64,000 nt of DNA from Fimbriosthenelais zetlandica (taxonomy: Eukaryota). The notes below the pieces were generated by a model. That model did no database searches. It saw only the letters and a program-made list of their open reading frames with translations, and was not told the DNA's origin. Location of the stretch: contig OZ365113.1 in assembly GCA_977030845.1 (NCBI GenBank), positions 31,186,001-31,250,000 on the forward strand, written 5' to 3'. Positions 34,455-62,381 of the stretch are shown in pieces. The first letter of the stretch is position 1, and every line of letters begins with the position of its first letter. The position numbers and the translations under genes were made by a program.

Positions 34455-34472
34455 GGCGTCACCTAGTGGTCA
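34455..34472 (-). promoter_or_regulatory. CTCF-like motif in a CpG-rich block
   Basis: Minus strand TGACCACTAGGTGACGCC versus core CCACYAGRKGGCGC (one mismatch). Confidence 0.4.
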
Positions 34473-39497: not shown

Positions 39498-41001
39498 CTA
39501 AATTGCCAGTCACCTAGCTATTCCCTCATTCTCCCATCACACTGTATACTATATTGCAATTTCTATCTCTCAAACTCTGTTACATTTCATTTGTCTCTCC
39601 CCTGCTCTCCAGTCAGATAAGAGACACTGTGATAGTCCCTTCCCTTCCTACTTCCCTTCCTATCAATTCCATCCACCCTCCACTCTTCCATGCACCTATT
39701 CAGATCCTCCCATATCTCTCCACCGACACTTTCCCTCCCAGTGTGTGTGCCTATCAGCCAATTAACAAGAGGCCTGAGTTAGAAGCCACACGATCACAGC
39801 CAACACAACACAAGACTAGATTCCGCGAGCAGCTCCCAGATAGGTCTCACAACGGTAAATCACCCAGCTGTTAAAACAAACCGCTGAGCAGTTGAGGCAG
39901 TTGGGGGGTCAGGGTCTGGACCCCAGGCCATGGAGCAGGACCGAGCAATATCTGAGCTGAACAACACCCATCTGGCTGGCTGATGGGGCTGTATAGGGCA
40001 GTGACCCTAGATAACCGATACAGGAGGATTATAGAGACCCGTGACAAGTCTAACCACCTACTACTACTACAGATAACAGCTGATGATACCCGCTCCCTGG
40101 TCCAGGTGTGAAGCAAATCTCGAGGTATTTCCCCCAACATAAAAGTCACTGATATGTCGGTATCGTTCAGGTTAAAAACATTGATCCATACTGAGTTCTG
40201 TAGGATAAATAGCAAGGAGTTTCAGAATGGAAATCAAACGCACTTATAATCAATTTAACAACCGCAACACATCCAAGATACCCATGGATATTTTTAAATA
40301 ATGGGTGGTAGGGGTGATTAAATGTTAATTTTCATTATTACTAACCACCATGTATATCAGAACCAATGAAAGAATTGATGAATTACACCATACCATCAAT
40401 GGTACTAATTCCACCATATACTTTGTCTCCTTTGATTACAGACCAGAAATGACTTCCAGAACAAAGAAAAATTGTTCATTTCTCCCTCGTTAAAAGGACC
40501 TTGGGCACGTCGAGTGACCTCTCTGCTCTAATCAAACACACCTCATCCTATCAGAGGAAAATAAGCCGGGGGGAGTACATACCTATGCTTGGCCTATCAG
40601 ACAGCATCATCTGCTCACGTGATGCACAACACATGTTCATGAGCCACTCTGGCCACTATTTATAACATTTCTCTCCTTCCCATACAGTTCCTTACTTTCC
40701 TCTTGACCTAAATTTGAGGGCCCATCAAATGCTTTATGCACGACCTTATAAGTATAAAGAAAGGCTATAGGGGCGGGGACGACTGTCTATTCTACCATTC
40801 TGTTTTTCATTTCCTCCACTGTTCAGATGGGGTCGCTAATGGAGCCCGCCATGTGGGGTGAGAGATGGGGGTGTTGTTTGCAATATTCTTTTCGATCATG
40901 AACATTAAGGAAGTCAGTGTGTCTTTTAACTTGTGTTGTAACAACTTCTGTGTCCCATGAGTATTTAAGACTGTAATGGCTATGCCATATCTTATCCCAA
41001 A

Positions 41002-41221
41002 GACAAGCAATCTACATGAATACAGTAATGGCCACGCCAGTGACAAGTAATTTATATGAATACAGTAATGGCCACGCCAGTGACAAGCCAATTTATATGA
41101 ATACAGTAATGGCCACGCCAATGACAAGCGATTTATATGAATACAGTAATGGCCACGCCAGTGAATACAGTAATGACCAGGGACAAGCAATCGAAATGAA
41201 TACAGTAATGGCAGCGCCAGA
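41002..41221 (+). repeat. minisatellite, 40-41-bp unit, ~5.5 copies
   Basis: Unit GACAAGTAATTTATATGAATACAGTAATGGCCACGCCAGT at 41002, 41042, 41082 and 41123, a partial copy at 41163 and a diverged copy at 41182. Confidence 0.95.
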
Positions 41222-44200
41222 TACAGGAAATTTAAAATTGACCGTTATGCCTAGGCTATATGCAGATTTAAAGTTGGTATTGAGTAAAGAATTGAGAAAG
41301 TATCCTTTATAGGACATTCATGATTCCTTCAAGAAGGTCATGTGCGACTATTTAGTCAACAAACAAGACGGTTAGACATTAGCCACCGCAGATAACGCCT
41401 CCAGCCTGTATCTAAAGTTGCATGCACCTCCTCACCTTGGCCAACTTTTCATGAAAGTCAAACATGAAACAATGGCACGGTACCACCAAGCAACCAGCAG
41501 ATCGCATTACAAGCCTATAACCAATAGGGAAAAAACCTCAATGCCTACAAAAAGCTAGTCCTATTGACATATGAGGTGGGAGAGTGGGAGGGGGTGGGAT
41601 CTGTGGGTCGGGAGATCGGGTTAGGGTTGATGGCTGGAAAGAATCTTTTTACCACCAGACGACATTTAGCCACGATGTGCCCGCCATACCTGTTGAACTG
41701 AGCCGAGATGACACAGAAGAAGGCAGGGAATTTGCACACAAAAACGAGATGAACAACAAAGGGCAAGATTTCTTTTGTAGCACCTGCATGGGGGAGTGGG
41801 GTTGGGTGGGGGTTGAGGCGGGGGGGTGCAGGAAGAGAGAGTGGAAGGTATAGAGGGGTAAGAGAAGTAGGTATAAGGCGGTCCGATCTGATGTCTCGGT
41901 TTCTTTGTAATTTGGATCCCGCCTTTAGTATTTCTTTGTTATTTTGGCCTGGATTGGAGGGACTAGTGAACAGGATGGGCGTGCGGGAGAGGAGCTGTAG
42001 GGCTGCCTTGGTTTTGTTTTGATAACCTGATCGCATTAGAAGCTGGGCCTTGAATAGCAGAGCTTGGCTTATCAAGAGTACTCCGACATCCACAGAGGTT
42101 ATACATGCCTCCAGAGAAAGGAATTAGTCCAAACAGTCGACTTAAACATCAAGTCTTAGTTATTACTATAGAAATTCTTTCCCAAAAGGATGGGTATGAT
42201 AAAGGTTTTCGTTATCGAATCGAGTAGTAGTTATTCGATGTATGACAAAGGGATTAATATCCAAAAAGGGACGAAATGATCTCAACAACAAAAAGTATTT
42301 CAACGACACAAATGGGAAAAAAATCGCAAAGTGAAATTTCTGATTAATTTAAACGTAATAATAATAATAATAAAACATATTAATTTCAAATCAAATAATG
42401 TCCAAAGATGTAAAAACAGAATAAATCATACAATTTTGCGGTTTGGTGTTTCTCTCGTGACTTCTATTCAGGCTGCAGTTCAAGAGTCCAAATCCTGCAT
42501 GCAATAAGAGACATAACAAATTAGATTCATCAAAAGAGTTGATTGCCTTTTTTTAATTTGAAATTAAATACATTTAGGAAAACCCTTAAATGCCAAGAAA
42601 AAACTAAGTGATATGAGGAGGAAAAACGTTATTGGGTTGATTGTACAAAAAACAGAGCTCCACGCTGTGGCTTCAGTTTGATCCCAAAGCTTATAGGCGT
42701 GCCATACATAGTAGAAGTATATCCTTTTTAATCACTGTAATAGAGAAAATTGTATGGTTAATCCCAATTGACAAGCATAAAAGCCATCATGCACGCTGCA
42801 GTGGGGAGGGATAAGGCAAAGCTTTAATGACTCAACCCACCAATGTGAGGAAGGTCCTCCACCCATCCGACATTGTATTAATATCAACTCCATGCCTTCA
42901 CTAATTACATTCGTTCTATACGCTTCATTTTTCATCCAGCCATGCTATCGTATAAGCGCTTCGGATGGATAATTAAGATAAAACCGTCTCTAAGGAGAAA
43001 CCCACACAGACAGAGGGAGAAAAAAAATGGGATGGTCCTCGTGATGAAAAAAAGACCTCCGATTAACAGATAGATCTCATCACACGAAAAAAGTCCATTT
43101 AATGCAGACATGATTTGAGATAAAGGTTGGAAATGGCAACCTTTCTATAGCCGGAGCGCCTCTCCCATTTAAATACCTCATGTTTACATGTTTTGCCTCC
43201 TCTCCGTGGTTTCGGCCGATGCCAAAAATTATATTTTGATTGTTTGACTGTCGATATTTATACTTTTTAATGGTGAATCCCGTCCTGCATTATGATCTCT
43301 ACTATATAAATTGTGTGCTATAAAATTTTTGACTTTTGGTGCTTTTATACCTTTTTCTCACATGTATACACTTGTGTCAAATTCACCACCTGAATGGGAA
43401 AAGTTTAGAAACTTTTAATGACAATTTTGTTGAAACTGATGAGTGGTGTCTGAAGCATGGGTAATTAGAATATTCAATAGCCCATGCATCTTTCGTGCCT
43501 CCATCTCCCACGCCTCGCCACAAAATGGGACACAATGAGATATTTAATGTTAGTGCCCCGCCCAAAGTTTCATACATAAATCGAAATGAATAACATTCCG
43601 ACGATATCTAGATCTATATACTCTATCATTTACTCAATACCCCATGCCGGGAATTAGGAATAATGTTTCGGCGGATTCTACATCATGAGATCTATTTCAC
43701 AGCAAGGGAAACTACAATATCTGGGTAATCAGTCAGAATTTGCAAATATTAATTCCTAAAATAGCAGAATCACGAGCATATATTCCAACAAACAATATGT
43801 TTGATGGTATATCAATATTTATCAGCTGTCCATTATAACATATATAGTCAATTAATCTAATGTTAATCCATAACCATTTCACCTATACAAATCAATGTAT
43901 GTTTCAGTATTCATGTGTTTATACATAGACATGTTCTTCAACAAAGAATAATGTATATTTGAATATTTTAGTAATTAATTCTTGTCTATGAAAGGAACTA
44001 TATTTCTCAAATCCCGAAAGGCCTATTTATTCCACCTTATACCAGAATGAAGCAGCATCTTTGACCTCCCATATCTCCTATTTATTCTGTCATCAGAGGA
44101 AAGGTGCAACATTTGGCCTAATTGTCATCAATAGTGTATATACATAGATAGAAGCCAAGGGAAATCTAGAAGGAATAATGCATAAAGGAATGCATCTGCC

Positions 44201-47200
44201 TAAAAGCATATGGTTCATTAATGTATCTACTGGAGGTCATTAATATCAAGATGGGAGGGGCATGCGCAGTGGAACCCTCTGATAGAGTGATAAGCACGGT
44301 ATGAAGTAAAAGAGAGGGGAGAGAGTGATCGGGGCACTCCGTATTCCAATATTAAAAGCACATGGGTACTTTTGCTGACAGCTAGGGTATTACCAACGGT
44401 TCACAGGGGCCCATCAATCAATGACAATTTCGGCAATTAGCAAAGAGGGCCAGGCCTGTTGAAAGTGAAATAACAGCGGGCAAAGAATTAATCTGCCCAG
44501 AGCCCAGGTCCAGTAAGTGGTAGGCCCGCTCCGTGATTAAAGGAACGCACTTAAAATGCATTTCCCTCCCGCGACATGGTACACATCGATCCCAAATCAG
44601 TTTGACACCTCGCCAAAGTGCGCATGCTCGCTGACCCTCAGAGGTCAGGTGAGCTGGTGGTGGCTTTGGTGGTGGGCGGAGGTTGGGTCCATTTTTCCTT
44701 ATTGTTTTCAGGGCGCAGCTGAGAAAGGCCCTCTCTCATTAAGTGACCCAACCGCCAGGCGGCTATAGTGTGCTGCTTCAATCTCATTGGCTACTCCCTT
44801 CAGATTAATGCAGATGGCTTTTATAATCTATTCATAACTGAAACCATTCTACATTGCTGATCCATTAGCCAAGTGGAACGACCAATTTGTCTTGGATATT
44901 TTTTTCGCCCACGATACTGGTGCTAGGTATATATATATACGCTCTGTGATAGGCCTACACTCACAAAATGTCGTCAGCTGCAGTGGGAAGTCATGGTGGC
45001 GAGTAGGGGTCTGGCAATGAGACTTTCACATGGCCAGGGAGATGCAATGTGGGTGGGATGGAAGGCTCTAAAGGGATTACTTGTTCCTGTACAAAATGAA
45101 ATAACCTAGGAGTTGATCCCACTAGCAATCCTGATCACGATACCAAATTAATATCAATGCTGCAGCATTATGAGAAAATCAAAATTAAGTGAAAACAATA
45201 TGATCATACGATGTACATTGACTATTAAAATACAATGTCCTGTTGGGAAAATAGGGGCGAAAATAAATGTTTTTCCAAATTGAAGTGGATAACATTTGAT
45301 GTTTATCTGGTTTTAAAGACGAGTTGGGGAGGGGCAACGAACGGATGATAATCATGAAGCTAGGACACACTAATCAGATAGGCTGATGTGTACTTTTCCC
45401 GTTGGATACAATAGGAAAATATGGAAGCTGACTATGGGATTAGTGTGCGCCCAGCTTAAGTGACCAAACGTCAAACAATCTGTTGTACAGTGGATCAGTG
45501 GTATTATGAGAGACTGGGAAACGCTCTCATCAACATAGCACCGGGTTATCTTTTCCAATCAGGCCGCCACAAGGCATGAGACTTAATGTAATCTGCATGG
45601 CAAACTCCCAGGAGAAAGAAGCAGATTAATGAAATTAATACTAACGGTCTGCTCTGTATAATTCTGACTGCAAGTGACAGTGACAGTGATGGGAGTCGTC
45701 CTTGTGGTGTTTTCTCCCTCGCTCAGCCATAGCTTAGATCAGCACCTTGGCAAATAATCAATTATGCATGAAAACATAGTGAAAGATTAATCCCTCTTAA
45801 TAATGAATACTGATGGGCAAACTCGGAAAGACATCTGGAAAAAGTAATGTTCATTGCATAATGTCTCCATAACTAGGAACCCGAGGGATAAATATTGATC
45901 AATATCTGGAATAATACTTTTGAATATTCCCCTCCCTATTTATTCTCTCCATGGCCCAGTTAAGGATATACACAGCAGGTAGGATGAAGTCAAATATGGG
46001 AAAGGACTCATGTTTCCAAAGCATTAAATGATACCACAAAAGGGTAAACATGACTTGGTTTCCAAGGGAAGCATATTTTTGGGAGAAGCCTGTCTTCTCG
46101 CCCTAATGATATGACCAGGCCAAATGAGTGGGTCAGGAGGAGAGTAACCCCCCTGGGTCATTTCCCCGCTTTGTGAAGCATGCATTCTGTCGCCTCGCCT
46201 TAGCACTCCTCGGTCCTTTGAGGGGGGCCACACCTCGGGGAGTGAGGGGGGAGGGGGTTAGAGAGGGGGGAAGCCAAGGAGAAGCCATCTATAGCTTGGT
46301 TTCAGTACCAAGCACACGCCCGTGGCTTCCCCCTGACCCCGCCCCAAATCATGCGAAATAATTAACCAAACAGACATGCTTGCCGCCCGCGTTTTAGTCA
46401 TGAACTGGTCCTCCAAAGTGGTGACTTCTCTCACCTATCCTGTGCCACCAACACTCCCCACCACCACCCATACTTTTGTCACCACCCTTTTCCTATATGG
46501 AATCACAAAGTCGTCTCTCTCTTTTCTCTTTCTCTCTGGTGTTCTGCTCCTATAAGTGACTCAATACAAGCATTATGAGCAGCTCGGGCGCCAACATCAA
46601 AGGCGAGGCGATGTCCGGTGTGCCTTTTGTGTCTTTGCCTCTGTGGGCATGTATTTTAGGACGGCTGGCTGCTAATTATCATGATTATGACAGGCCAGAA
46701 TGTAGGAGCTCTGACGCCTATATGTACCAATGACGCTATACCCTTCGCCAAGACACTTTACACCGAAATAGTCCGGTACATTCCATTCTCAGCATTCTGC
46801 TTAACTGTAGCACAAAACTTAGAATTACCTGGAATGGGAAAAAGGCCTTTACCTCAAAGAGGGTCATGGGCAACTGGACTAAATTGGTGACCGGATTTTT
46901 AAATTTGAAATTTCACATTTTTTCACAGTTCCATTGCATGTATCATGTCCATATGAGATAATCAAAGTCTAAACTTTTGGGCAATTTGTGTCTTTCGCAA
47001 AGTAGTTGGATGGCGTTTCATGAAGTATAAATTGCTCCGGCACTAACTATAGTTGGAGCAGCTCACCCCCATCCCCCACACCCAACCCACCACTGTAATG
47101 AGCGCCTCAGAGCAGTAGCGGCCATGGCGCGAATGTTGAAGCCATTTTGAGCACACCACAGCACCCCTTTCATTATGAGGCCAATTCCACTCGCTGTCTG

Positions 47201-50200
47201 GGTCCAGCCTCCAGAAAAGAAAATGGAAATCAAACAAACATTAATATATCGATTTGGCCAGGGAGGGAGAAGGGTAGGAGGGGAGAGAGGGTTGATCCAA
47301 GCGCGAGACTCTGAGCCTTCGTCATGCTTGTCGCCCCCCACAGACAAACCTTCTCCAAGGAAGATTATTGTAACGCAGCTTTCACAAATGATGTTTTTGT
47401 TATATTTCGGCGCCAATAGTGCAAGCGGTCCCCACAGGGTCTCTGTCATAGAAGGAAGCGCCAACACTATAGTCCTTTTCATTTCTTTTCAGCACCAGCA
47501 GCAGACAAAGAAGTTTTCTTTTCGAGTTTGTCAAGATATTACTGAAGATTATTAAACATGAAATAAAAATACTTTGTATGCAAAACTGACATCTGTTACA
47601 ATTCAACATAATTTCAATGGTCATTGAAGACAAAGGGCATGAAAACAAGATCCAGTCATATGATGTAATTTGTAAGGGATCCATCCAAACTTAAGCCTTG
47701 AAACTTAGATTTCTTTCGAGCACGCTATCTGACTAAAGTATACATAGACAATGAAATGCAAGCTCAGATGTGGGCTGGGGAGCGCCATGACTCGAGCTAA
47801 TCACAGGTAATCAGGCACGAGTGGGGTCAATGGATCCTATAGGGAAAGCGGGGTGTGCAGGGTGGGGGCTCAAGCCCCTGCAACTACAATGCTCGTTACG
47901 CCAGCCACACAGTGGGTGTTGGGTGACAACAGCACCCGAAACCCTAGCCTGGCGCCACGCTTTAGGCCAATTAATAATTTTCGGCTCTGGGGGTATATCC
48001 ACACACAGTGGGGGAGCGTGGCGACTTATGCATATATATGGGAATGGGGGTGTGGGTGGGGGTGGGGGTGGGGGTGGGGTGGGGAAAGTGGAAGAGAAAG
48101 AAGTGAAGGGGGGTTTGCTTGCTTGCTTGCTGCCACCAGCGATTGCAGGCTGATCTTGTTTCGCCCTGTTCTGACTGGTGTCTGAGAAAATAATTGATGG
48201 CATGAGTTCCCATATAGGATGGGGGTGGACGCGCCCCCGACGCGGGATCAGCTCGCCAACGACTCACAGCGACTCGTACATTGTGATTCCCGCTATGTAT
48301 TGATGACATATTGATGGCTTGCTTTGTCTAGTCGGCCCTGCTCCTCCAAGGCAATTCTATACGGCTAGGCGATCCTGATATATAGAAATCTTGGCGTCAA
48401 TAATTTGAGAAGGGAGAGAGGGGAAGGACGAGGAGGAGAAGCAGGAAGTGGAAGGAGAGAAGGGTCTGGTGTGGGGGAGAGTTGGTATATTGGGGCGTTT
48501 TTGTGAGACTCGAAGGTATGTATATATGTTTATCATCCAAGGAAGTGAAATGAACTTTCATTCCTTCAGGGAATATTCAGAAAAAATATGGTCTTATAAT
48601 TGGCCTATATAGATAGAGAAATGTTTAAAAAAAATTAACACAACATTTTTTTTTTTTTAAACTCAAGGGTATATATGTTGGTATGTTCGATCTCCTGTCC
48701 CTTTATGAATGTGTCTATCAAACTCCACCTGTCTATCTATCCTCGTAACCTTATAACACCATCTCTGGCTTTGTCTCTCATTCTCTCTGACATGCTGCCT
48801 CTGTGTGTGTGTGTAACATAAGGTTTTATTTTGGTATTGTACTCCCTCCTTCCTCCCCCTCCCCTACCACCCACACCTCCCCACCCCCTCCACCACCCCC
48901 ACCCCCCGAGCGACAGGAGACCTTGATGAGAGAATATAGGTCACCTGCATGTTCATAGGAATGAACCCCGATATTAGTACATCACGTCAGTTGTCCTGCT
49001 GCTGACCTCTCGCTCCTGTCGCCCTCTGTTGGAGCAGTTTCATTAACAGCTGCTGACTCACCCATTAACACTTAACAAATCACTCTCCAATTATCACTTC
49101 AACACCAACACTTATCACTGACATTTTTTTGTAAAATATATATTTAAAAGAGAAATATATTTTTCTTCTTGTATCCATTTATCAATGGAATGAATTAAGC
49201 AATGGTGACGTAACCTTATATAATATAGGCCTATATTCATAAAGTTCCACGGAGTAGTTTATACGTAAAACCTATTATGAAATAAGTACTAATTCCCCAT
49301 TATCTTAGAGGCAATCAAGTTGAGATTATGGCTCTGGACTGCGGTATATACAAGTTACCATCTTCCATATACTACTATACCGTCGGGTAATACGGTACCC
49401 GAGTAAGTAGTATAGGAAATTGTCACAACTTATGAAATCGTATTTTCCTCACAAAGTTCGATTATCTAAATGACAGGACAGTGAACTGTCGATGACTCTA
49501 AAATGAATTATTTCCAGGAAGAAAGCTCTCAGAGAAAAATAGTTTTTTTCCAGGTAAGAAATTATTTCTGTCCAGAAAAAGAAACCACTGATGGTAGAAT
49601 GTTATGAAAATATCGAGCGGAGGAAGGAGAGACAAGGCTTCATTGGTAGACACTGGTCTGGACTTTAGTGGGGCTTTTTCTTTGGCGATAATTATGGTCA
49701 TGAACATTTTTGGCAGACCACCCAGTATTCCTTCCATTTATCTCGCCGTATATACCTGACTGAGTTTCATCTATGATCATATCATTTTTTGTGATAAAAG
49801 CAATCTTTTGTGCTCATATAATAATAAACTGTCTTTGGTGAAACAGACTGGGACAAGCTATGTGAGAGAGGGTTTTGACAATAGCCAGGAAGACTGTTCA
49901 GTGGAGGCTTGTCTCTGCCTCCAGCCGAAGCCTTAATCAGGTCCGATATCGTGCCTGTCTGTGGAGAAAAGACCAAGCCTCTGTCCTAATTATCGCTTGG
50001 TAATTAAGTTGACTGGAGGTGAAGCCAGCCGCCATCTTGGACAACTACCCCTGTCCACCAGAAGAGGGCAGGTCAGTCTGCCGAGCTGGAGCGCCTTATT
50101 AAGAGCTCCTCCCAGCCTTATTTCTGACGTCTCCCCATGTCAAACCACTACACAAGCCCTGATCATATCAGAGACTTGCTTAATTACACCAGATATTAGT

Positions 50201-51960
50201 TCGTATTATGAATGCAAATGAGTCCACATCCATCTCTTAAGCCTTATCATCAGCGGGTCCCTCTCTTTTTTCCCTTTCATGACTTGTGCCTGATCATATC
50301 CCAAAAGGACATGCAATCTTCTGTGGTAGAAAGTACCTTTGGCTGGAGGGGTGCTAGCATCTATAGATGATAATTAGGGTAATCATAACCATAAATATTC
50401 CCCTGGAAAAATCCATCTCATTTTTTTCCCTCTACTCCTTTTAAGATGTCGTCTGTGGCTTGGACTATGGCTAATGATATGTATATAAGCACTAATGGAA
50501 GGAAATGGTCTGAGGTCACAAATGGACGTTGGACCTGCTTAATACTACACTATCAAATGTATTACACAGCCTGCGCTTGGCCTTGGCCTCTTAAGGATCA
50601 AAACCCAAGGCAATACCCTATCACGCATCTCATTATTTATATCACAAAGCTGGCGAGGTAATTAATATGGTGTGTAGGGGGTTGGGGCGCCAGCAGAAGA
50701 AAGTCAATGAGGCTGGAACGCAAGGGCTTTGGCGCTGGTTGGTGGGCTATATAGGGGGGAGTGTGGGCTCGCCTTATGGATCTATATGATGTTGTGGCCT
50801 CCTTCCAGTTGTTTTGGATCTGGGTACTGGAGAACAGAGCCGTCTGATCAATCAACGCCTAAAAGGACAACCTGGCGCTTTATGTCTAAATGTCTCTATT
50901 GATTCCTTATGTTAATTAAGAAGGACATTTCAGCAGAGGGCAAAAACCTGGCACACTGATCACTAAAGAACTCCCAAAATAAGGATCCAATTCTCTTCTC
51001 ACACTCAAGCCAACTTTACCATTGTATAATTGGATGGGATTTTAGCAACAAAGAATGAGCGATTTGCTTCACAAGGATACGTCCTTGTATATGTATATAT
51101 CAAACTGGGACAATTGGGATAGGGGCGCTTGTCGAATCAGTGATCATTTCATATGGACTCAATTTGGCAATGTGACACTGCGAATGGCAGTTCTACTGTC
51201 ACCCAGCCACTTCCTCTGATCTTTGGATGTACCAAAATCTCCTCGGAAAATCTGATATTCCCAAAGCTGAGCATGGCCAAAGATTGACCTCAGCTCATAA
51301 TTACAGGACCTGTTTCTCAAGTTCAGGTATTCGGAATTTCTTATACACACAAAGCACTGAATAGATTCATCATTTCTGCACAGAAATTCACCTTCGATAT
51401 AGAAAATTATATTTCACAAGGAGCACTCTTTAACAAAATATAGATACTTAGATACTTGGCTATAGACTAGGGCCAACATTCATTTAAGCAGCACGTTGAC
51501 CATAGTCCCAAGGCACCAGTGGTTCCTTATTTATTCATCGACTACACATTAGTTTTCTGACCAGCACAATAGGTCCATAATTAGAGCCAATCTATTACCG
51601 TTAGCTGCGGCAGCAATATTAATATTAATGCCAGGGTGAAACTGAGAGGTGTGAAGGCTGCTTTTAACTCATAAAAATTATATAATTCAATGCAATCAAA
51701 ATATAGGTCAATAAACGCATAAAAAATACATTTATCAAGGAAAGCCCAAGGTCACTTGGGTGTAGTCTTTGGCAAATGTCCAAGACCTCCAAGAAATTCA
51801 GACAAAAAGTTTTCCACTTGGATGTAGGTTAAAAGTGGTCAGGTTCAATCAATGAGAATAAAACAACAAGTTAACAAGTCAAAATTAATTATGATTATGG
51901 AGTATTATAGATCAGATGGGACATCAGATGGGGCACTGACAGTCATTCCTATCGCGTATA

Positions 51961-52006
51961 GTTAAAGCCATATGGGGGTTAAAGCCATCTGGGGGTTAAA
52001 GCCATT
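51961..52006 (+). repeat. 17-bp tandem repeat x2.7
   Basis: GTTAAAGCCAT(A/C)TGGGG at 51961, 51978 and 51995 (partial). Confidence 0.9.
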
Positions 52007-55000
52007 TCACACAGGTAAGGGCAATAATCACCAAAATGTATAAATTTGGGGAAATTCCAGTATTCAACTTTTTCCATATTTATTTACCTATGGTGAGGCA
52101 TTTTGAGGTGAAATGAAGAGGCAGAATATGCACAAACACATATTGCCACCTGCCTCAGTGACAACAAACACTAATGTATCTCTTTGTCTGTGCGGTTGTT
52201 GCCAAGCCAAAGTGCAATAGTCATCATAACCATAGAAGCCAGATAGAAGCCATTCTTCCCCGCCATGAAAGCTTAACCCATCCATCCACAGGGGTGTTAT
52301 TTTCTCCCCCTTTAAATCCCACAAATCTAACCTGGCCTTGATAAAAAATATATCCCCCCAAAAAACAAAGCCCTTCATCTAACCCGGGGGTTATAGGCTT
52401 ATCCCGGGTGAGGCGATGGTTGAGGATTTGGGGTGACAGGTATTGAAGGGGCAGGGATGTCGTGGTCTGGGCATGGAAAAAATGGCGGCCATGTTATGTG
52501 GCTGCTTCACCTCGGAGGCCGAGCTAATTAGAAGGCGGGCATGATGGATCAGGCCTCGCCCCTCACACTCTCACCCTCAGACGATGTGTTTCCTCTCACC
52601 ACCACAACCAGCAATCATTCCAAAGCCAATAAAAGACCATTGGAACTGTGTATGGATAAGTCATAATCTATAGACATGGATTATGATCTGTGGAGTATGT
52701 ATGAGGTTTTCGGGTGGGATTTGATCATTAAAAAAGGTTGTTGTGAGAGGTAAGAGGGGAAGAGTGAACACATAAGCATACACGACTCATGCATCGACGA
52801 GTCATCAGTGGGCAACACATCGCAATGCTGACAGGGCTTCTCAGAAAGGCCTTCTCCCCCCACTATAGCCAGGCCTGGCATGGCACATTGCTGTAACCCC
52901 ATCACTTCTCCTCCCATCTCACCTTCACCTCTCACCCTGTATAGCGGCCAAGGTCATGACATGGGTGGGGTCAAAGGTCAGCTCTAGCGAGCAGCTCCTC
53001 GTGGGAAGTACACCTGCGGTAGGAGCGGAGGAATTGCAATTAAAGCCATGTGTTTGGGTGATAATGAGTGAATCTATGGGTGGCATAGGGCAGGCGGGTA
53101 TAAAAGCTGCATGCAGCACTGTTTTAGGCTGACTTCAATCAATAAATGCCACGGCCATATCTCACACACTGCCCTCTTCCTCCTCAGGCTCATCGACTGG
53201 GAAAAAAAAGGTTGGGGGTCGAGGCATGTGTTTTGTAAATGAAAAGCAAGGGGAGAAATTCTCAGGGTGCAGGTAGAAGACCCCCCGTTGAGAGAAAGAT
53301 CAGAGACCTCATGAAACGCATGGTACCGTGACAGGAATGATTGCTGACATTCATAGACTTGTATGATGAAGGGGGGAATACAGGCAACATTAATGTTACT
53401 CAAATTCCCTGATGTTTCTAATTGTAAAATGATAAGATACAGAATGTTGGGGAGAGAATGGGAGAAAGAAATCAAATAATGTTGGGTTATTTTGAAAGGA
53501 ATCACCAACAGTTTATCATATGGTCATCGAACTATTATAATAAAAGGGTGAAGTTCCATAAGTTGTAGGAGTGTGATCTTAAGAACTTTTAAGACATGGG
53601 TTTAAGACATGATCCTAACCTTCTATGAGATTAGGAAATGTGATTGATAAAATATTATAACATTTATAGCAATAAAATATTGTTAATACCGGATTAAAGG
53701 TAAAACGGCTTCAACCAAAATGTAAAATGCAGATGGCAGATATGAATCATGGAGATAGGATTGCTTTTCCTTACACCATCTAAAACAAAAACCCCACACT
53801 ACTCTATCTCCTTAGGTAAGACCATGTTTTAAGTCGTGCTCAGAGATAGTAATTAATCATAATTATAAGCGCTATACATTTTCATAATAGCATCGAGCAG
53901 AGGAAAAAGAAGCAAGCTTTCTGATGTTGGACATATATGTGCAGGGAAAATGGAAGCACTTTCTTAATTGAATGAACCATTCAATAATTAGAGGCCTAGG
54001 GACAAAATATCATGTTGACAGAAATCAATTAGTAAATTAGTAGCATGGGCATACATGTACAAACATGCAGGCCATGGCTGCCTACATGCAGGCTTCTCAG
54101 TTACCCATATTATATATAAACATATATCTTAATCATGATGCTATATCCAACAGAATAACACATTTCATAATCACCTAAAAATCAAATTTAATAAAAATTA
54201 CTAAAAATCCAGGCCTAAAAAGTGAGATCAAAGTTGTGAAGTATTACTGTATCAAAATGATGTCAGGTTCATTAATTGCATGATAACCTATATACCTGTA
54301 TTCATACATATCTTCAATATCTATTCATCATAATTATCAGACTTCTGTGATACACCTCGATCAAAAAAATAGAATAATTTAGCTTATATCTCATAAGAAA
54401 CTGTCGTATATTACTACTTAGGTAATTTACCTCTCAGATGGAATCCAGGGCCCGCTTTGTTCTCCCACCAAAGAAAAAAGGTCGCTAAGGCAGTCTCCGA
54501 TTACCTGAAAGCGATAGGCAGTTGATTCCAGTAATTAATCTTCGCCTTTCATCAGGGAATTGCATCCTCTGTATGCGCACGTTTTTACCTTGGAATTATG
54601 ACTGGGATATGCGCCTGTACGCCCTAGAAAGAAATTAATGACATGAGCTAAAGACAGACTGTATTTGAAGGGAAAGAAAACGACAGGTAGAAGAGAAATT
54701 GAGAGATGTAATCCAACCAAATGAAGATAGACCATTCAAGTTCTAAACATGATATATCATAGGAACAATATCATTAATATCAATATCATTAACTGTATAT
54801 CAATTGTACAAAAATGTAGATTATGATACAAGTATGTGTATGGTATTTTGTGGCTTAAACTCGCAATGTTTCAATGCATAGACTGAATGTTTTACCTGTG
54901 TATATGAAATATGAGAGTAAGAAATTATCTTATGGCCTCAAGGATAATATCAATACAGCCCATATATCTTTTTTCATTATCGAGACAATTAAATTGCCAT

Positions 55001-57902
55001 GGCAAGGAGCTACGACTGAATAGAACTTTCTTCCACATTGTAATAGATCTTAGACATATACACACACCAGCACAACTTTCCAATTATACCTACTTATTAC
55101 AACATTGCATGCTATAGAATATCAAGAAGGAAGCCTAATTAGGATAGGACAATAAGGAAAGGCAATTGAGGCTAACAGCAATTCCTTGTGGTCATGGCTT
55201 TTTTAATACAAAACTCTGGGCGAGCTAAAGCAATGTGAGTAGTATATGAGATAGGCACGATAGGCTGGCAATCAGTGCATTATGTATAATGCACCTAATC
55301 CATACTTGATTGTCTCATTTGTGTGATATCTCGTATCAGTCCATTTCTGCCTTCATTTATCTCTCATCTATTCAGGGATGATTGTGGTGGGGGGTGTGGT
55401 GGTGATGGTCAAAGTGGTGGCATTGGAAAGCTATAGTTCTGGGGGCCACACCGTTTCATATATTGCCTATACCACGTACTACCCCCCACCCACTGACAAC
55501 CTATTTTTTCCAGGATGATACATACATCCCTTTCTCAATAATTAGTGTCATTCCATTTGCTCCCGGCTATTGCCTATTGTTAGAATCTTGATTGCGGCTC
55601 ATGCTTTTGTTTCACCTGTTACCATAGTGAATCATGGATTCCCAGCAGCCCAGATGAATGGCAATGACACAGTTTCCTGAGACAACAAGGGGGTTATTCC
55701 TGTCGCTTCTGCCTAGTACCGAGTTGACCTCTTCATCTCCCTCTTCTGTCAATCCACCCAACTACACCAAGCGAGGAACCATTTCCATCAATCTCTTTTT
55801 GAATGGCCAGATCCCTGAGGGAGTTTCACGGGTTTTAAGGGTGGTTTAAAAGGCTGCTTTTTCATCGCCATCTATTTCCTTTTATCTTATTTCCTTAATA
55901 CTCCCACATGTATAGGTTATTTAAGAGGCAAAATATACAAAAAGTTCCGGTGATTATCTTTTGTGATAAGCTAAGGAATTCATAAATTAGCGACTGGGCA
56001 CAAACACAAATTTCAAGATCAAAGCAGTGGGCTTGATACTACACATTTTCCCCTCCAACATTACCATGAAAGAATTCATATATTACGATCAAAGACTTGA
56101 TTTAATTAAACATAATTTTTGCATAAAAAAATCATAGATGAACTTATTCTTTGATCTTCCCAATATAACATAGAGACAATTATATAAATGTTATATTCCT
56201 TTGGATTTTTTGTCTAAACTAGACCACAGAAATAAACTAAAGTGTCATTCAGTGTGGACCTCTAATATGGCATAACAAAAATTGCTCTTTCAAATAAGTG
56301 TCAACTACAGTGGTGTTAGACTGAAGCACTCCACCCACGAGCCAGCAGGCCTGCGGACATTTTGCCAAGAGGGAACTGACACCCCAATCAATGTGTATAA
56401 TTGCCACACATTGATAATTTGGAAATTGCTTGCCCCACATAGACTTATCATAAATCCACATCTAATTGACCCAATTTCTGTATACTGGATCCATGGTCAG
56501 TCGGGGGCCGCGGGTACAATGATCTGGGTAGGTAATTAGCAAGCGTGAATTGGGTGCCTGTTTTGTGTCTCTGGTCGAGGCAATATCGTGCTGAGGTCAT
56601 GTTACCCCATTGACTTCTCCAATATGAGGGGATGGGATTCTTATGGCTGTCACTGTGCAAGGATAATTAACATCGTATTCGCACTATATATGTGATCAGA
56701 AATAAAAAAGCAAAGAAATTTCTTTTTTCTCAAAGAGAAGAGATCACATTTAGAGAGATCGTTTAGGGGCGAAATTAAAAATTAATTATATAACATTTTA
56801 CCATAATTAAGATAATTAAAAAAAGATAATTATGTTGTCTACTGGTTTACATATTTTATCATTCGTAATTCCTATTTCCAGTATAATGACTGCATGTGTG
56901 AAAGCATTAACCCAAAACAAATATATGGCACTCCCCTACTAAAGAATCTACTTGTATGGTAGTCCTAACAAGAATTAAAATTGACCTCTTATCAAAGTCT
57001 TCGCTATCTTCAACTAAACAACTTTATGCCTTCTCCCTTTCTATCCAGATCTTTACTTGTATTTAAAGTTTAAGTGAGATTAATTCTAAATTTTAATTAT
57101 CTCAGTCCCAATAAAGCTATATTAATGGGTATGTGCAACAGAGGGGCCTCCCAAAAATCTAGATTTATTTCATCTCAAAGTAACAACTCTTGCTGGTGTT
57201 GGAGGCTATCATTAAAGAGGCCTAATTCCCTGACAGCCCGCCCAGCCTCCAGGGGTCGCTATGATATAGAACAGCCTATAAACTATCGGGGCAAATTGAC
57301 ATTAATCAGACAAGCGCTAAGGATTTTTATCCTCCAAATTTGAGATAAGAGCAATAGGCTTAAGAGCAGAAGGCAAAAAGAAACAAGTCACTTTTTTGTC
57401 AATTCTTGATACAATTAATCAGTGTGTGCGGGTATAACGATGGGAATTATATTTTATAATTATAAATATAATGGGAATTGTAGGCCTAATTATGATTTAA
57501 TCATCAAGCACAATGCTCTTGCACTATAGTTGTGCAATAGGCCTACTACATTGAAAATATAGACATGAGGGCTATAGGCCTAGTTTAGACCTGAAAGAGC
57601 AGCCTCCCATTGTGAGAATTCATCCCGATATTAATAAAATTGTATGAGTAGTAACATATAGTAGCAATATGCATAATTATAGACATTCATATTTTGATAA
57701 CATGTAGGCTAGGCCTACTCATCCTGTAGGATAGGCCTACTAGGCCAAGGGCCTATAGCTTACCTGAACCGGATAAGATATTAGCACCTACCGGTAGCCT
57801 ACCTCGTCGACAGAGATATTAATTGAGAATTTATGCTCAAATCAATGCATGAGTTTAAAATAGGCCTACCATAGGCCTACGTTTTGTTCAATGGGTAACA
57901 AC

Positions 57903-57946
57903 CATAGATATATAGTCTCTCCACGTGTGGAGACTATATATCTATG
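57903..57946. mobile_element. 44-bp minimal non-autonomous DNA transposon (hAT- or P-type) with perfect TIRs and 8-bp TSD
   Basis: CATAGATATATAGTCT...AGACTATATATCTATG are perfect 16-bp TIRs with CA...TG ends. GTAACAAC flanks both sides as a direct repeat (57895-57902 and 57947-57954). Confidence 0.8.
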
Positions 57947-58389
57947 GTAACAACTGATGCAGTGACACCCAGCTGTGACAGACTATGGGAAGGCAAATGC
58001 GCACATCTACCTTACCTAGGCCGAGGTCTACATTGCGGATATCTTTCAGGCAGGCCCTATTCATGTAGTAGGCCTACATAGCCTACCAAGGTAGGCATAT
58101 TCTTTATTTCTTAACTTTGAACCAATATAGTATCATTTTTAAGTGAGGGAAATGTTCCATTGCTATAAATTAAACTGTGTAGTCTACAATACATCTGACT
58201 TTCCATAGGCTGCAGCACATGAGCAGTGCTCAATCACATGGTCGGGGAAAACAAGACCCGGCATCACTCTTTTCCAGTGTTGCACCGTAATAACATGATT
58301 TCACATCTCCTATCAAACTCGCTTCACTTCTCCATCCTCAAAATATTCCACATTCCGAATGTCGTTGACATAGATCAATTAAAACTTAC

Positions 58390-58480
58390 CCAAAATCCTA
58401 GAAAACCATGCGGTGGAGTCTCGTTCAGTAAACAGTGACGGCCATGTTGTATCCATCCATCCCATAATAGACTGCAGCCA
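58390..58480 (-). other. candidate non-coding first exon, minus strand (possibly thtpa exon 1); TSS approximate
   Basis: Donor TGG|GTAAGT at 58390/58389. YY1-like AACATGGCCG at 58448-58439 inside the exon. CpG-containing context. Confidence 0.45.
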
Positions 58481-58760
58481 GGGTCGGGTCGGTGCACCGA
58501 GAAATACACGCCCTTGATTTTCCACAGTAATTAATTTGTGAATAATTGATTGACAACCTCAAATAAATGTCTCTCATTTGAGAAGGGATTCTATAGGCAC
58601 AGTGCTAAATATCTAGAGGAATTTGAACACTTGGAAGCGGACTGATTATTTTTGGCGGAGAAGAGCGGTGAGCAGTGAGTGTGGATTGATCGTCTGCAAG
58701 TTGTGTGAGTGAGTTGACACGAGAATCACAGAGCCGCGTTCTCAACATAAGGACAAGTTT
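58430..58760. promoter_or_regulatory. candidate bidirectional promoter core
   Basis: CpG-containing block between two divergent donor-terminated segments. Contains CACGCCC (KLF/SP-like, ~58507), TGATTGACA (PBX-TALE-like, 58547-58555), TTTTGGCGG (E2F-like, 58650-58658) and a YY1-like site. Confidence 0.4.
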
Positions 58761-58767
58761 GGAGTTG
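58670..58767 (+). other. candidate non-coding first exon, plus strand; TSS approximate
   Basis: Donor TTG|GTAAGA at 58767/58768 downstream of the putative promoter core. Confidence 0.35.
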
Positions 58768-59142
58768 GTAAGAGCTATTTTCCGCTATGTCATGTTTCTG
58801 ATAATTACGAAACTGTAATTAGTCGCCATTATCATTGACTCGTGGAACGAGAAGGGTGAATGAGTGAGAGGAGGAAGCAAGGGACCATGTCAAACGCTCA
58901 GGTGGGTTCGGTGAATTCACGTGCTAATTTGGATCTCCATTAGCGGTGCCTGATGACCATTACTTTTTTGGTAGAGTCAGATGGCAGGGAGTTGGAGGGG
59001 TGAATGTGTTGGGCTCGTTCCCTAGATTTCATGTGATGCCAATGCTAACCTAGATAATCTCAGCTTCCAGACGGTCTGGCATTTTTAATTCAAGATTTTA
59101 AATCGCTTTAGTTTATCATTGATGAGCAGCTGGGGTGGGTCG

Positions 59143-59228: not shown

Positions 59229-60186
59229 CCATGCTGGCTAGGCAATTGCATCTCTGAATCAGTGAATGTAAAGGATCCCCCTTCTTTTGCCTGCTAGTGT
59301 AAACGTCAACATGGCATTGGCTAGACAGGCTAGCAAACAGGAGTTGAGGGTGGGGGGTGCTGTCTCTAGCCATCACCCCGGCTTGACCCAGTTCACCTCC
59401 CCGGGTCTTGGGCCACTCATTGCGGTCAGCGTTTGGCACTGGACTCGGAATGTTGATGGAGAGGAGCAGCATCAGCAGCAGTGAGTGGTGCGATATGGGT
59501 TTTCGGTCTGTTCCAGAAAGGCAATCGTTCCACTCGAGGCCTAACTGTAGGCCTATCGCGTTTGGGAAATGATTGCAGCAGGGCAAGAGGACCCATTCAT
59601 TCAAACTCAAAGACACGAGTGTGTGATGTCATGGCATAGGCCCCCATGCCTAGGTCTAGGCTTAGACCATTTAAAAGGTCTAGGCCTGTAGGCCTACCCC
59701 AAAAAGGGGGTGAGATATGGACCGTTTGGGTGATCACAAATGGGCGGTTCTGGACCGATCACTTCCCTAGCCTACCACACTTTACCCCCACTGCTCCTAT
59801 TCCCACTTCCCCATCCCCAGCCTCCCACGCCCCCCATCCCGCCTGCTCCTCCCACCACAGTCTAGGCTCGCCCCCGCCTTTAGTCTAGTCACTTGTCGCG
59901 CTCTCTAAGCCCATAAATACATGTCAGTCTGACAGTTTCAGACGAGTCAAACTTTTTGTGTGGTTGGAATTCAATGCCTTTCATGCTTCTTGTAACCAGT
60001 TGTAAACTTGTGGTAGGAAAACATGTATGACCTAAAGGTGTGGACACTAAAAGAAAGTGTTATTTAGGCCAATGCCTGTAGGGCCTACAGGCTACCTAGG
60101 CCTAAAATTCATCTTAGACTAGGTTAAATATTATTAGGCCTAATTATTGAAAAAAAATTGTATTCACTGTCCCTTCATTGACTTTA

Positions 60187-60210
60187 TTTTTTTTTTTTTT
60201 TTTTTTTTTT
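60187..60210 (+). repeat. poly-T run (T24)
   Basis: Direct reading. Confidence 0.95.
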
Positions 60211-61626
60211 ATTAAACCAATTTTTTTTAATGTTTTCATGACCTATCCATTGTCATTGTTTTTTAACATAAGAGTAGGGCTCCCATTTGTTTGTGAGTGC
60301 CCGGCCCGGGATGACGAGGACCTGTGGTGAATAAAATACCAGGAAGAGTCACTAGCCTTGGTTAATAGAATGAGAGAATGATTGGCTTCTTAAAGACCTT
60401 TTTATCACTGATTACCTTAGCCTGACCATTGATGACTAATGATCTTGAATTCCGATACACTCTGGCTTATTCATCCGTCGTGATTGTAAAGGAAACCTCC
60501 CAGAATTGAGTCAGGGTTCATAAGACATCTAATTCAGATTTCATTATGAGACACTTTCATTCTCATACGCCTGTAACTTATTGGTAAAATATTTCCTGAT
60601 AGGCCTAGGCCAATATTTTATATTATAATAGGCTATACAAAGTTGACACCATGCTGACATGAGTTAGGCCTAATTAATTACATGTATAAATGATTCAATT
60701 TTTCTTTCTCTTTTTTCCCCTTTTTTTCTTTTAGTAGGGGCCAAACTTTTCTACGCCTTAAGCACTGCCCCAAATTAACCCCCTCCCCTTTCTCCCACCC
60801 CACCCCCAACACACCCACCCACTCCAATTTCTTCTGCTCTGATGTATACTAAAGGGATAACGATTTATACAAAGCATCCATAAAATGGCCGACTTAGCCC
60901 ACAAGAGACAGTGTTATCAGGCCTTCCAAAGTTGGCCCAGTCGTGACGAAAGCAGCATTCCCAAGATCAGGAAGACACTGGCCATTTAGTCGTACAAAGA
61001 ACCTTCTTTACCCAGGCCTTTTTCATCAGCACTACTGTAATGACTTCGATTAATTTCCCTCTGCCTTCTATCTTGTCCCTCCTCCTTTTAATTTGCCAGG
61101 ATTTTCGCCCTCCACAGTTCGTGGCCTCAGATTCCATGCCCCACCCCCTCCCCTCCCACTCCCCAAATCTTGGTTTTGTTCCTTTTAACAAAACACTTAA
61201 GGAATGGCTGGATTTGCCACACTTTTACTTTTCATAAAAGCTCTATGGCTATTTCAATGTGTGCGTATGTATGAAGAGATAGCGGAAGGGGAGAGCGACT
61301 AAAGAATAGGAAAGAGAGGCGAAGGAAAAAAAGCGTTTCCAATCAGTGGCATTATTTTCCAGGCGTCATATGAGGAGGGGAGAGGCAAATATGAGCATAA
61401 AGCATTGACGTTTATGTATTGATTGTCTTGTGCGGTGTTGCAGGCGTCGTTAGAGGCTAGGACCGTGCTCAGCACACATGCCCCGATCAATGCAGGTAGA
61501 TCAAGTAGCCATTAGACAAATTGAAAGCGCTAGGAAAAAAAAATTGGGGGGACGAAACAATGGGCCCCTTCTGTCGACGTGTTGGTCTGCTACTGCTAAC
61601 CTTCCAACTTTGTCTTTTTCCAAAAG

Positions 61627-61803
61627 GTCACGACCTATAACGATACCACCCGGATGTGACGTCACGGGGGGAGCGACACCGCTGGTGATGGACGTTAATG
61701 AGTGATGGAGGAGAACGAATAGGAGGAAGAAAATCAGAAATAGAGGGAGGAGAGAAAATGGCGAGAATACAGTATAGAAGCAGACCCGGACCATTAGAGC
61801 GAG
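61627..61803 (+). other. candidate internal exon (177 nt) of a plus-strand gene; 5'-UTR, possibly containing the start codon at 61758
   Basis: Branch point TGCTAAC (A at 61599), polypyrimidine tract CTTCCAACTTTGTCTTTTTCC, AAG ending 61626, donor GAG|GTAAGT at 61804. All three frames contain stops, so it cannot be fully coding. AAAATGG at 61758 opens MARIQYRSRPGPLER up to the donor (phase 1). Confidence 0.55.
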
Positions 61804-61895
61804 GTAAGTAGGCTGTGACGTATGCTTCACGTCATGACACCGCGCGTCATTAATGAGAATATTGTCTTTGCGATTAGTATCGATCTCTGCCACCC

Positions 61896-61911
61896 TCGCC
61901 TGGGGGCGCTG
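61896..61911 (+). promoter_or_regulatory. CTCF-like motif
   Basis: TCGCCTGGGGGCGCTG versus CCRCCAGGGGGCGCTG (two mismatches). Confidence 0.3.
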
Positions 61912-62381
61912 ATGAGCGAGAGCATTGACAATTTGCATGGATATTATTATGCGCGGGCATGAGCCCAATATGAGTGGGGGAACAGCAGGAGTGGGCATCT
62001 AATTTGTGCCTTCTTCACTGCTCCTGGGCTATATTTCTCTATCTGTATTTTCATGTCTTTCCCTGCCCTCTGCATTTTTTATTATTTAACCTCCAATGTT
62101 GTTAACATGGAATCTCTCATAGATCTATTCTCTTTTCCCTTTGATGTAGGCTATTGATATAATGTCATACTTTTTATTGTTGATATTTTTTCAGGAGTAA
62201 TACCTTTTTCAGTAAGCCTACCGATATGCTTGACCAATGTGTGTTTTTTTTCAAGAATTTTTTTTTCTTCGGTAGTATGTTTTCTCTTGGTTTTATGTAT
62301 TCCTATGCCCAATGAATTATAGATGATGTAGGTGATGTCTCAAAGCATTATGGTTCCACTGAAAATCTTGTAGCCTATATA

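What the first reader, a model, noticed from the sequence alone, without database searches (positions are those of the whole stretch)
58385..58775. Candidate bidirectional promoter 41 kb upstream of the thtpa coding exon
Divergent donor-terminated segments (minus: TGG|GTAAGT at 58389; plus: TTG|GTAAGA at 58768) lie under 400 bp apart around a CpG-containing core with YY1-, KLF/SP-, PBX-TALE- and E2F-like motifs. Splicing 58390 to the acceptor at 17429 would give thtpa a 40,960-nt first intron and a leader with short uORFs (e.g. ATG GCC GTC ACT GTT TAC TGA). A housekeeping enzyme gene with such an intron is unusual and fits the regulatory-block model.
Basis: partly seen in the sequence, partly recalled or inferred. 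Interest (0 to 1): 0.7.

Follow-up and report, generated by a model that had tools for sequence, protein, structure and literature searches.

The report
Likely divergent thtpa–Zfhx start zone
A small CpG-enriched stretch between a thiamine-triphosphatase gene and a large Zfhx developmental regulator gene sits where the DNA's T-versus-A strand bias flips sign, so it is probably where the two genes start in opposite directions, but no RNA data could be obtained to prove the proposed splice junctions.

Summary
The two divergent donors are not evidence on their own: they score 8.7 and 6.8 bits, and about 19 such divergent pairs are expected per window. The motif matches are short or partial.

Independent evidence still points to this place.
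- The plus-strand gene is a real Zfhx gene. Its ATG-bearing exon lies about 148 kb to the right, so thtpa and Zfhx are head-to-head across a roughly 190-kb coding desert.
- The stretch is single-copy, and its CpG obs/exp is about 0.8 against a background of 0.49.
- It is the scar-free centre of a dense TAGGCCTA field.
- The plus-strand T-A skew is negative over 1-58 kb and positive over 59-183 kb. The minimum of the cumulative curve over 254 kb is at 58,894. Control introns show T>A on the sense strand in 6 of 6 stretches.

I read this as a divergent start zone at 58-62 kb (confidence about 0.5). The exact junctions are untested, because no RNA run was listed. The plus donor at 58768 and the acceptor at 61627 are weak. 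A CRE-rich island at 61.55-61.95 kb with a strong donor is a better or second plus-strand promoter.

Earlier notes of this scan reported TAGGCCTA fields around gene starts on other DNA of this genome.

The parts
58385..58775 (.).
   Evidence: Sequence read. Single copy in the genome.
58200..58950 (.). CpG-enriched single-copy island 1 (obs/exp about 0.8 against a 0.49 background; GC 0.43)
   Evidence: (windows 58251 and 58501). It holds the best single change point of the T-A skew (58,501) and the global minimum of cumulative T-A (58,894).
58384..58392 (-). Candidate donor TGG|GTAAGT (exon ends at 58390), 8.7 bits. It is the first donor of at least 8 bits to the left of the island on the minus strand.
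58425..58445 (-). Short uORF (7 codons including the stop) in the putative thtpa leader exon
58765..58773 (+). Candidate donor TTG|GTAAGA, weak at 6.8 bits. Stronger neighbours are GCG|GTGAGC at 58668 (9.1 bits) and CAG|GTGGGT at 58902 (10.9 bits).
17430..58389 (-). Proposed 40,960-nt first intron of thtpa. It has T>A on the minus strand and no detectable coding potential.
   Evidence: Plus-strand T-A skew -0.044, z -6.8. 16 of 20 2-kb bins are negative. Codon-usage scan and Pfam found nothing.
16789..17429 (-). thtpa exon: acceptor-bounded 97-nt leader, ATG at 17332, 181 codons of CYTH domain, donor TTAG|GTATGT
57481..58076 (.). Left TAGGCCTA field (8 copies)
59548..60672 (.). Right TAGGCCTA field (6 copies). 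The scar-free gap 58077-59547 contains island 1.
61551..61950 (+). Island 2: CpG obs/exp 0.97, and one of only two half-CRE clusters in 254 kb (includes the palindrome TGACGTCA at 61657). It is a candidate second or alternative plus-strand promoter.
61627..61803 (+). Its acceptor is a weak AAG|G and its donor GAG|GTAAGT (intron from 61804) is strong at 11.6 bits. It is more likely the 3' part of a first exon.

Best explanation
The 58.2-58.9 kb island is the core of a divergent (bidirectional) transcription start zone shared by thtpa and a Zfhx gene. This part is inferred from sequence, not shown by RNA.

Minus-strand side:
- Transcripts begin inside the island.
- They carry a short non-coding leader with uORFs that ends at the first good donor (58390).
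- They are spliced across about 41 kb to the acceptor at 17429, 97 nt before the thtpa ATG.

Plus-strand side:
- Transcripts begin a few hundred bases to the right and run towards the ATG-bearing Zfhx exon. Its acceptor is at L017:3046, which is window scale 207,046.
- They use one of several donors: 58668, 58768 or 58902.
- A second, CRE-type promoter at 61.55-61.95 kb, with the strong donor at 61803|61804, probably gives an alternative Zfhx leader exon.

My sub-estimates:
- A divergent start zone lies somewhere in 58-62 kb: about 0.6.
- thtpa mRNA really starts there: about 0.45.
- The donor is exactly 58390: about 0.3.
- The plus junction is 58767 to 61627: about 0.15.
For: 1. Gene arrangement.
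- thtpa is on the minus strand (CYTH; 38% identity to snake THTPA).
- A 1275-codon ZFHX3-type exon is on the plus strand at window scale 207-211 kb.
- No other coding signal lies between them.

2. Both ATG exons start at acceptors.
- thtpa has a pyrimidine tract followed by CAG|AG.
- In Zfhx all three frames are closed between the acceptor and the ATG.
- So leader exons must lie upstream of both.

3. The 2 kb just upstream of the thtpa exon is CpG-poor (obs/exp 0.13-0.5), which is unlike a promoter.

4. Strand skew (T-A)/(T+A) on the plus strand:
- -40 to 0 kb: -0.006.
- 1-16.8 kb: -0.053.
- 17.4-58.4 kb: -0.044 (z -6.8).
- 61.8-134 kb: +0.042 (z 8.6).
- 134-184 kb: +0.031.
- 25 of 29 2-kb bins are negative on the left and 48 of 62 are positive on the right.

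5. Where the skew changes sign:
- The global minimum of cumulative T-A over 254 kb is at 58,894, also after masking homopolymers.
- The best single change point is 58,501.
- The support interval is 54.25-60.0 kb, with permutation p<5e-4.

6. Controls for the skew method:
- Introns of five adaptin genes of this genome show sense-strand T>A in 6 of 6 stretches, pooled +0.064.
- Snake AP1G2 and Capitella Zfhx introns give the same sign.
- Transcription-associated skew in introns is established (PMC5786239).

7. Island 1 is single copy, and its CpG content is about the 95th percentile.

8. 14 of the 51 TAGGCCTA sites in 254 kb flank island 1, leaving a 1.5-kb scar-free core.

9. 58389 is the first donor of at least 8 bits on the minus strand to the left of the island.

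10. AATAAA counts over 58.8-134 kb are 39 on the plus strand and 95 on the minus strand, against 42 and 58 expected.

11. Human precedent: rs4982766 is annotated both as a THTPA intron variant and as a ZFHX2 missense variant (PMC11352382).
Against: - There is no transcript evidence: no RNA or DNA run was listed.
- There is no comparative evidence for the island.
- The donors are at chance frequency, and the plus donor is weak.
- The skew resolves only to about 54-62 kb.
- The skew fades over 184-207 kb, although at least part of that stretch must be Zfhx intron. So skew is an imperfect reporter.
- Replication origins at CpG islands can give the same sign change (PMC2817419).
- The minus-strand skew block continues to about 0 kb, about 17 kb beyond the thtpa exon, and the last thtpa exon was not found. 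The long minus-strand unit may therefore not be thtpa alone.
- GC content of 0.43 fails classical CpG-island criteria.
- Other promoter-like islands exist at 24.5, 31.3, 34.2 and 134 kb.
Confidence: 0.5

Rival explanations
1. A real divergent start zone exists at 58-62 kb, but the minus-strand product is a long divergent non-coding RNA or another unrecognised unit. thtpa would then be embedded in it and use its own start, either a proximal one or another upstream exon. Alternatively, the true shared start is the CRE island at 61.6 kb and not island 1.
For: - The minus-sense skew runs on to about 0 kb, far past the thtpa exon.
- Two CCAAT boxes lie 25-95 nt upstream of the 17429 acceptor.
- Island 2 has higher CpG content (obs/exp 0.97, above the 99th percentile), a CRE cluster and the best donor in the region.
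- After masking, the plateau of the skew minimum spans 57,996-62,004.
Against: - The proximal region is CpG-poor and shows intron-like skew right up to the acceptor: 17430-19429 is -0.063.
- The only minus donor near island 2 is weak: 61600, AAG|GTTAGC, 6.8 bits.
- The TAGGCCTA field is centred on island 1, with a mean position of about 58,755 worked out by hand.
- The change-point support interval ends at 60.0 kb.
Confidence: 0.22
2. There is no promoter here. The donor pair and the motifs are chance matches in intergenic DNA. The skew switch reflects a replication origin, or oriented repeats, or both. The CpG enrichment is that of an enhancer or orphan island in the Zfhx regulatory landscape.
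For: - The donor pair is expected by chance.
- Earlier notes of this scan describe many promoter-like islands without genes in this genome.
- Bidirectional asymmetries also originate at replication origins in CpG islands (PMC2817419).
- The skew is absent in the 23 kb before the Zfhx exon.
Against: - The skew is step-like, with block ends near 0 and about 184 kb, rather than a long decay.
- It involves T/A only, as in the control introns of this genome, and has the same size.
- It survives homopolymer masking.
- Both genes demonstrably need upstream leader exons.
Confidence: 0.23

Closest known systems
Human and mouse THTPA-ZFHX2 head-to-head, overlapping gene pair (14q11.2)
   Same: - The same two gene families are in divergent orientation.
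- THTPA transcripts have a 5' intron that reaches into the Zfhx gene's territory: rs4982766 is annotated both as a THTPA intron variant and as a ZFHX2 missense variant (PMC11352382).
- That the two genes are head-to-head in mammals is from my own knowledge.
   Different: - Here the coding exons are about 190 kb apart and the thtpa leader intron would be 41 kb.
- The organism is a lophotrochozoan. The best named Zfhx hits are Capitella at 64% and Pinctada at 63% identity.
- I could not confirm the adjacency in snake or Capitella within the 10-kb flanks available.
CpG-island bidirectional promoters of animal genes (start sites less than 1 kb apart)
   Same: - A divergent arrangement with CpG enrichment over background.
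- Housekeeping-type motifs (E2F-like, YY1-like, KLF-like).
- Strand asymmetry that flips at the island.
   Different: - The start sites are unknown.
- GC is only 0.43.
- One partner is a tissue-restricted developmental regulator with a leader intron of about 148 kb.
Genomic regulatory blocks with bystander genes
   Same: - A large coding desert around a developmental transcription factor.
- An unrelated housekeeping gene interleaved with its regulatory landscape.
- Non-coding DNA around the Zfhx exon aligns at 74-84% identity with a related species.
   Different: - Conservation of non-coding elements across the desert, and of island 1 itself, could not be tested.
- Here the bystander would share the promoter itself, not just the neighbourhood.

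Membership tests
Bidirectional promoter | Two transcription start sites on opposite strands less than 1 kb apart | not testable with these tools
   No RNA or CAGE data. The look-up of sequencing runs listed no run, so read laying could not be used.
Bidirectional promoter | Divergent transcription units on the two sides | tested here: inconclusive
   Indirect only. The T-A skew changes sign at 58-59 kb with the polarity expected for divergent transcription, and controls give 6 of 6. A replication origin could mimic this.
Bidirectional promoter | CpG-island-like, presumably unmethylated core | tested here: inconclusive
   Obs/exp is 0.78-0.82 against 0.49 for the region, about the 95th percentile. 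GC of 0.43 is below the classical 0.5 threshold. No methylation data.
Bidirectional promoter | Both partners are real genes that need an upstream first exon | tested here: met
   thtpa: CYTH domain, with an acceptor 97 nt before the ATG. Zfhx: PF24056 domain, with an acceptor 54 nt before the ATG and all frames closed.
Spliceosomal GT-AG intron 58389-17430 (minus strand) | Consensus donor, pyrimidine tract and AG acceptor | tested here: met
   Donor TGG|GTAAGT at 8.7 bits. The acceptor is a pyrimidine-rich tract followed by CAG|AG. Use of the junction was not tested.
Spliceosomal GT-AG intron 58768-61626 (plus strand) | Consensus donor and acceptor | tested here: inconclusive
   The donor scores 6.8 bits, the weakest of 29 candidates. 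The acceptor is AAG|G, with the disfavoured A at position -3.
Genomic regulatory block with a bystander gene | A developmental regulator in a gene desert with an unrelated gene interleaved | tested here: met
Genomic regulatory block with a bystander gene | Conserved non-coding elements and conserved synteny across distant species | tested here: inconclusive
   Only the flanks of the Zfhx exon could be compared (74-84% identity to the relative). One 44-bp match to Capitella was found. The human THTPA/ZFHX2 overlap rests on PMC11352382.

The most novel reading that the evidence does not exclude
The head-to-head coupling of thiamine triphosphatase and a Zfhx gene through one shared start zone would be an ancient bilaterian arrangement, kept from lophotrochozoans to mammals (THTPA-ZFHX2). 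On this reading the small enzyme gene stays tethered by its leader exon to the regulator's promoter, even where 41 kb of intron now separates that exon from the coding sequence.
Probability: 0.3. Interest if true: 0.55.

Novelty: new member of a known kind. Interest (0 to 1): 0.4.

Why it matters
If confirmed, this would be a clear invertebrate example of a housekeeping bystander gene that shares not only the neighbourhood but the promoter of a developmental regulator. The same gene pair is found in mammals. That would help explain why this microsynteny is retained. It would also give a defined element to test for co-regulation of thtpa and Zfhx.

On method, the case shows that T/A strand skew, calibrated on a handful of introns of the same genome, can locate a divergent start zone in an unannotated genome without RNA data.

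Tried and rejected
- RNA evidence. The look-up of sequencing runs on 58200-58900 (kind rna) and on the thtpa exon (kind any) listed none (after several busy answers). Read laying was therefore impossible.
- Comparative evidence. A related species exists (Logan contig L021; the Zfhx exon is 90% identical in DNA). Its copy of the island could not be reached: ORFs next to the island found nothing. The 407-kb contig of a second relative gave no DNA.
- Synteny. The snake THTPA locus and the Capitella Zfhx locus show no partner gene within 10 kb. An adaptin neighbour as in vertebrates was not found next to the window; the nearest is 1.27 Mb away.
- Other candidate islands. The strongest CpG island of the desert (window scale 98.8-99.25 kb) is a young repeat with 100%-identical copies elsewhere, so I rejected it as a promoter. 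The 34.2-kb island has a perfect YY1 site on the minus strand but no minus donor of 5 bits or more in the roughly 700 bases downstream of that site, so I rejected it as thtpa exon 1.
- Non-coding RNA. Rfam and tRNA scans of the window were empty.
- Last thtpa exon. It was not found.
- Zfhx start codon. The small ATG ORF in 61627-61803 cannot be the Zfhx start, because stop codons close all three frames just after the Zfhx acceptor.
- More skew controls.

Full report
**What is in the sequence**

- On the minus strand, TGG|GTAAGT puts the last exon base at 58390.
- On the plus strand, TTG|GTAAGA puts the first intron base at 58768.
- The short uORF lies on the minus strand at 58445-58425.
- The thtpa exon begins at 17429, behind a pyrimidine tract and CAG. 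Its ATG is at 17332, and it runs to a donor at 16789|16788.
- This exon encodes a CYTH domain (Pfam 9e-20). Its best named relative is a snake thiamine triphosphatase at 38% identity.
- Joining 58390 to 17429 would give an intron of exactly 40,960 nt.

**Is the observation more than chance?**

No, not by itself.
- A generic donor matrix (frequencies from memory, so approximate) scores the two donors at 8.7 and 6.8 bits. The window holds 64 plus-strand and 47 minus-strand sites of at least 8 bits. About 19 divergent pairs 100-500 bp apart are expected and 24 are seen.
- For exact GGTAAG, 2 such pairs are seen against 0.75 expected.
- The named motifs exist, but the E2F and YY1 matches are partial, and picking names after reading the sequence carries no statistical weight.
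- CpG enrichment is real but modest. Obs/exp is 0.78-0.82 against a regional 0.49, about the 95th percentile, with GC 0.43.

**The surroundings**

I extended the window to 254 kb.
- The only long open frame is a 1275-codon exon on the plus strand at window scale 207,052-210,876 (L017:3052-6876). It carries the ZFHX3-type zinc finger (PF24056, 4e-16).
- It has hundreds of Zfhx relatives. The closest named ones are Capitella (64%) and Pinctada (63%), so the animal is a lophotrochozoan.
- This exon starts at an acceptor (L017:3045|3046). Stop codons close all three frames before the ATG at L017:3100, so Zfhx needs at least one non-coding leader exon upstream.
- thtpa (minus) and Zfhx (plus) are therefore head-to-head, about 190 kb apart.
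- A codon-usage scan trained on known exons of this genome recovers these two exons as its top hits and finds nothing convincing between them.
- Rfam and tRNA scans of the window are empty.

**Direct tests that failed**

- A related species is present in the protein collection. Its contig L021 is 90% identical in the Zfhx exon and 74-84% identical in patches of the flanks. Its copy of the island could not be fetched.

**Independent indirect evidence: strand skew**

The decisive indirect result is the T/A strand skew. The plus-strand (T-A)/(T+A) values are:

| Stretch (window scale) | Skew | z |
|---|---|---|
| -40 to 0 kb | -0.006 | -0.8 |
| 1 to 16.8 kb | -0.053 | -5.3 |
| proposed thtpa intron, 17,430-58,389 | -0.044 | -6.8 |
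| 58,768-61,626 | +0.069 | 2.8 |
| 61.8 to 134 kb | +0.042 | 8.6 |
| 134 to 184 kb | +0.031 | 5.3 |
| 184 to 207 kb | about 0 | 0.5 |

- 25 of 29 2-kb bins are negative on the left and 48 of 62 are positive on the right.
It stays there after masking homopolymers and simple repeats, with a flat bottom from 57,996 to 62,004.
- The best single change point is 58,501 with 500-bp bins. With 250-bp bins the support interval is 54.25-60.0 kb, and no permutation reaches the observed gain (p<5e-4).
- To calibrate, I took intron-rich stretches between matched exons of five adaptin genes of this genome. All six stretches show T>A on the sense strand, pooled +0.064.
- Introns of snake AP1G2 and of Capitella Zfhx give the same sign.
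- The size and sign of the two blocks are those of introns transcribed leftwards on the left and rightwards on the right. Such transcription-associated skews are established (PMC5786239).
- Poly(A)-signal hexamers agree for the right block: AATAAA occurs 39 times on the plus strand and 95 on the minus strand, against 42 and 58 expected. They are uninformative for the left block.

**Two further indicators at the same spot**

- Island 1 is single copy.
- It is the scar-free centre (58,077-59,547) of a dense field of the palindrome TAGGCCTA. The window has 25 copies against 0.87 expected. 14 of the 51 copies in 254 kb lie at 57.48-58.08 and 59.55-60.67 kb.
- Earlier notes of this scan report such fields around gene starts elsewhere in this genome and read them as transposon excision scars. 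I confirmed the enrichment here but not the genome-wide link to promoters.
- The 2 kb directly upstream of the thtpa exon is CpG-poor (obs/exp 0.13-0.5) and already shows intron-like skew. This argues against a proximal promoter, although two CCAAT boxes lie there.

**What weakens the specific model**

- The skew resolves only to about 54-62 kb.
- The skew vanishes in the last 23 kb before the Zfhx exon, which is at least partly intron.
- On the left, the skew continues to about 0 kb, about 17 kb beyond the thtpa exon. The last thtpa exon could not be found.
- Replication origins at CpG islands can give the same sign change (PMC2817419).
- The 61.55-61.95 kb segment has CpG obs/exp 0.97 (above the 99th percentile) and is single copy. 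It is one of only two half-CRE clusters in 254 kb, and it ends in a strong donor, GAG|GTAAGT (11.6 bits).
- The other half-CRE cluster, at window scale 133.8-134.15 kb, has the same build, with CAG|GTGAGT at 13 bits. These look like CRE-driven alternative Zfhx promoters, not internal exons.
- On the minus strand, 58389 is the first donor of at least 8 bits to the left of the island. Most other candidates nearby are GTAGGC strings created by the TAGGCCTAC scars.

**Conclusion**

- The best reading is a divergent start zone at 58-62 kb with island 1 at its core. It serves a long minus-strand unit that most simply is thtpa with a 41-kb leader intron, and a long plus-strand unit towards Zfhx.
- The CRE island probably acts as a second plus-strand promoter.
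- Overall confidence is about 0.5. The exact junctions are much less certain.
- In kind this is a known thing: a bidirectional promoter and a bystander gene in a regulatory block. It mirrors the mammalian THTPA-ZFHX2 pair, where a THTPA intron overlaps ZFHX2 coding sequence (PMC11352382).
- I found no paper describing this microsynteny.
- It is a moderately interesting new member of a known kind, pending RNA data.

Noticed in passing
window 57481-58076 and 59548-60672; also L009:6213-7385: The palindrome TAGGCCTA occurs 25 times in the window against 0.87 expected and forms dense fields. Two fields flank island 1. A third (7 copies) lies next to a young repeat at window scale 100.2-101.4 kb.
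   Followed up: partly
window 61551-61950; twin at L005:9801-10000 plus L011:1-150: These are the only two clusters of half-CRE sites (TGACG/CGTCA, at least 5 per 300 bp) in 254 kb. Each sits in a CpG island with obs/exp near 1, at or just before a very strong plus-strand donor. They look like CRE-driven alternative promoters of the Zfhx gene.
   Followed up: partly
L009:4800-5250: A CpG-rich element of about 450 bp with internal tandem repeats has at least 40 copies in the genome. Several on other chromosomes are 99-100% identical, so it is a very young and possibly active repeat family.
   Followed up: partly
window 34000-34800: A single-copy CpG island (27 CpGs, GC 0.52) with a perfect YY1 consensus (AAGATGGCGG) on the minus strand at 34221-34230, but no nearby minus-strand donor. 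Possibly an orphan promoter or an enhancer.
   Followed up: partly
window 15001-16000: A CpG-rich patch (obs/exp 0.85-0.99) just downstream of the thtpa coding exon, inside what should be its next intron. Not explained.
   Followed up: no
window 1-16788: The last coding exon of thtpa (about the last 15 positions of the CYTH profile) could not be located. The minus-sense T>A skew continues to about position 1 of the window, so the transcription unit may be much longer than the coding part suggests.
   Followed up: partly
window 17354-17356: An in-frame ATG lies 8 codons upstream of the likely thtpa start (17332). Its context is weak (T at -3), against A at -3 and G at +4 for the second ATG.
   Followed up: no
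L013/L012 boundary region, window scale 163,727-163,770: A 44-bp stretch 82% identical to DNA about 2.2 kb upstream of the Capitella Zfhx exon (L053:7762-7805; E 2e-4). Possibly a deeply conserved non-coding element.
   Followed up: no
L009:8501-9500 and L011:2501-3500: Two 1-kb low-complexity stretches with extreme T/A skew, +0.48 at window scale 102.5-103.5 kb and -0.42 at 136.5-137.5 kb. They dominate the finer segmentations of the skew profile.
   Followed up: no
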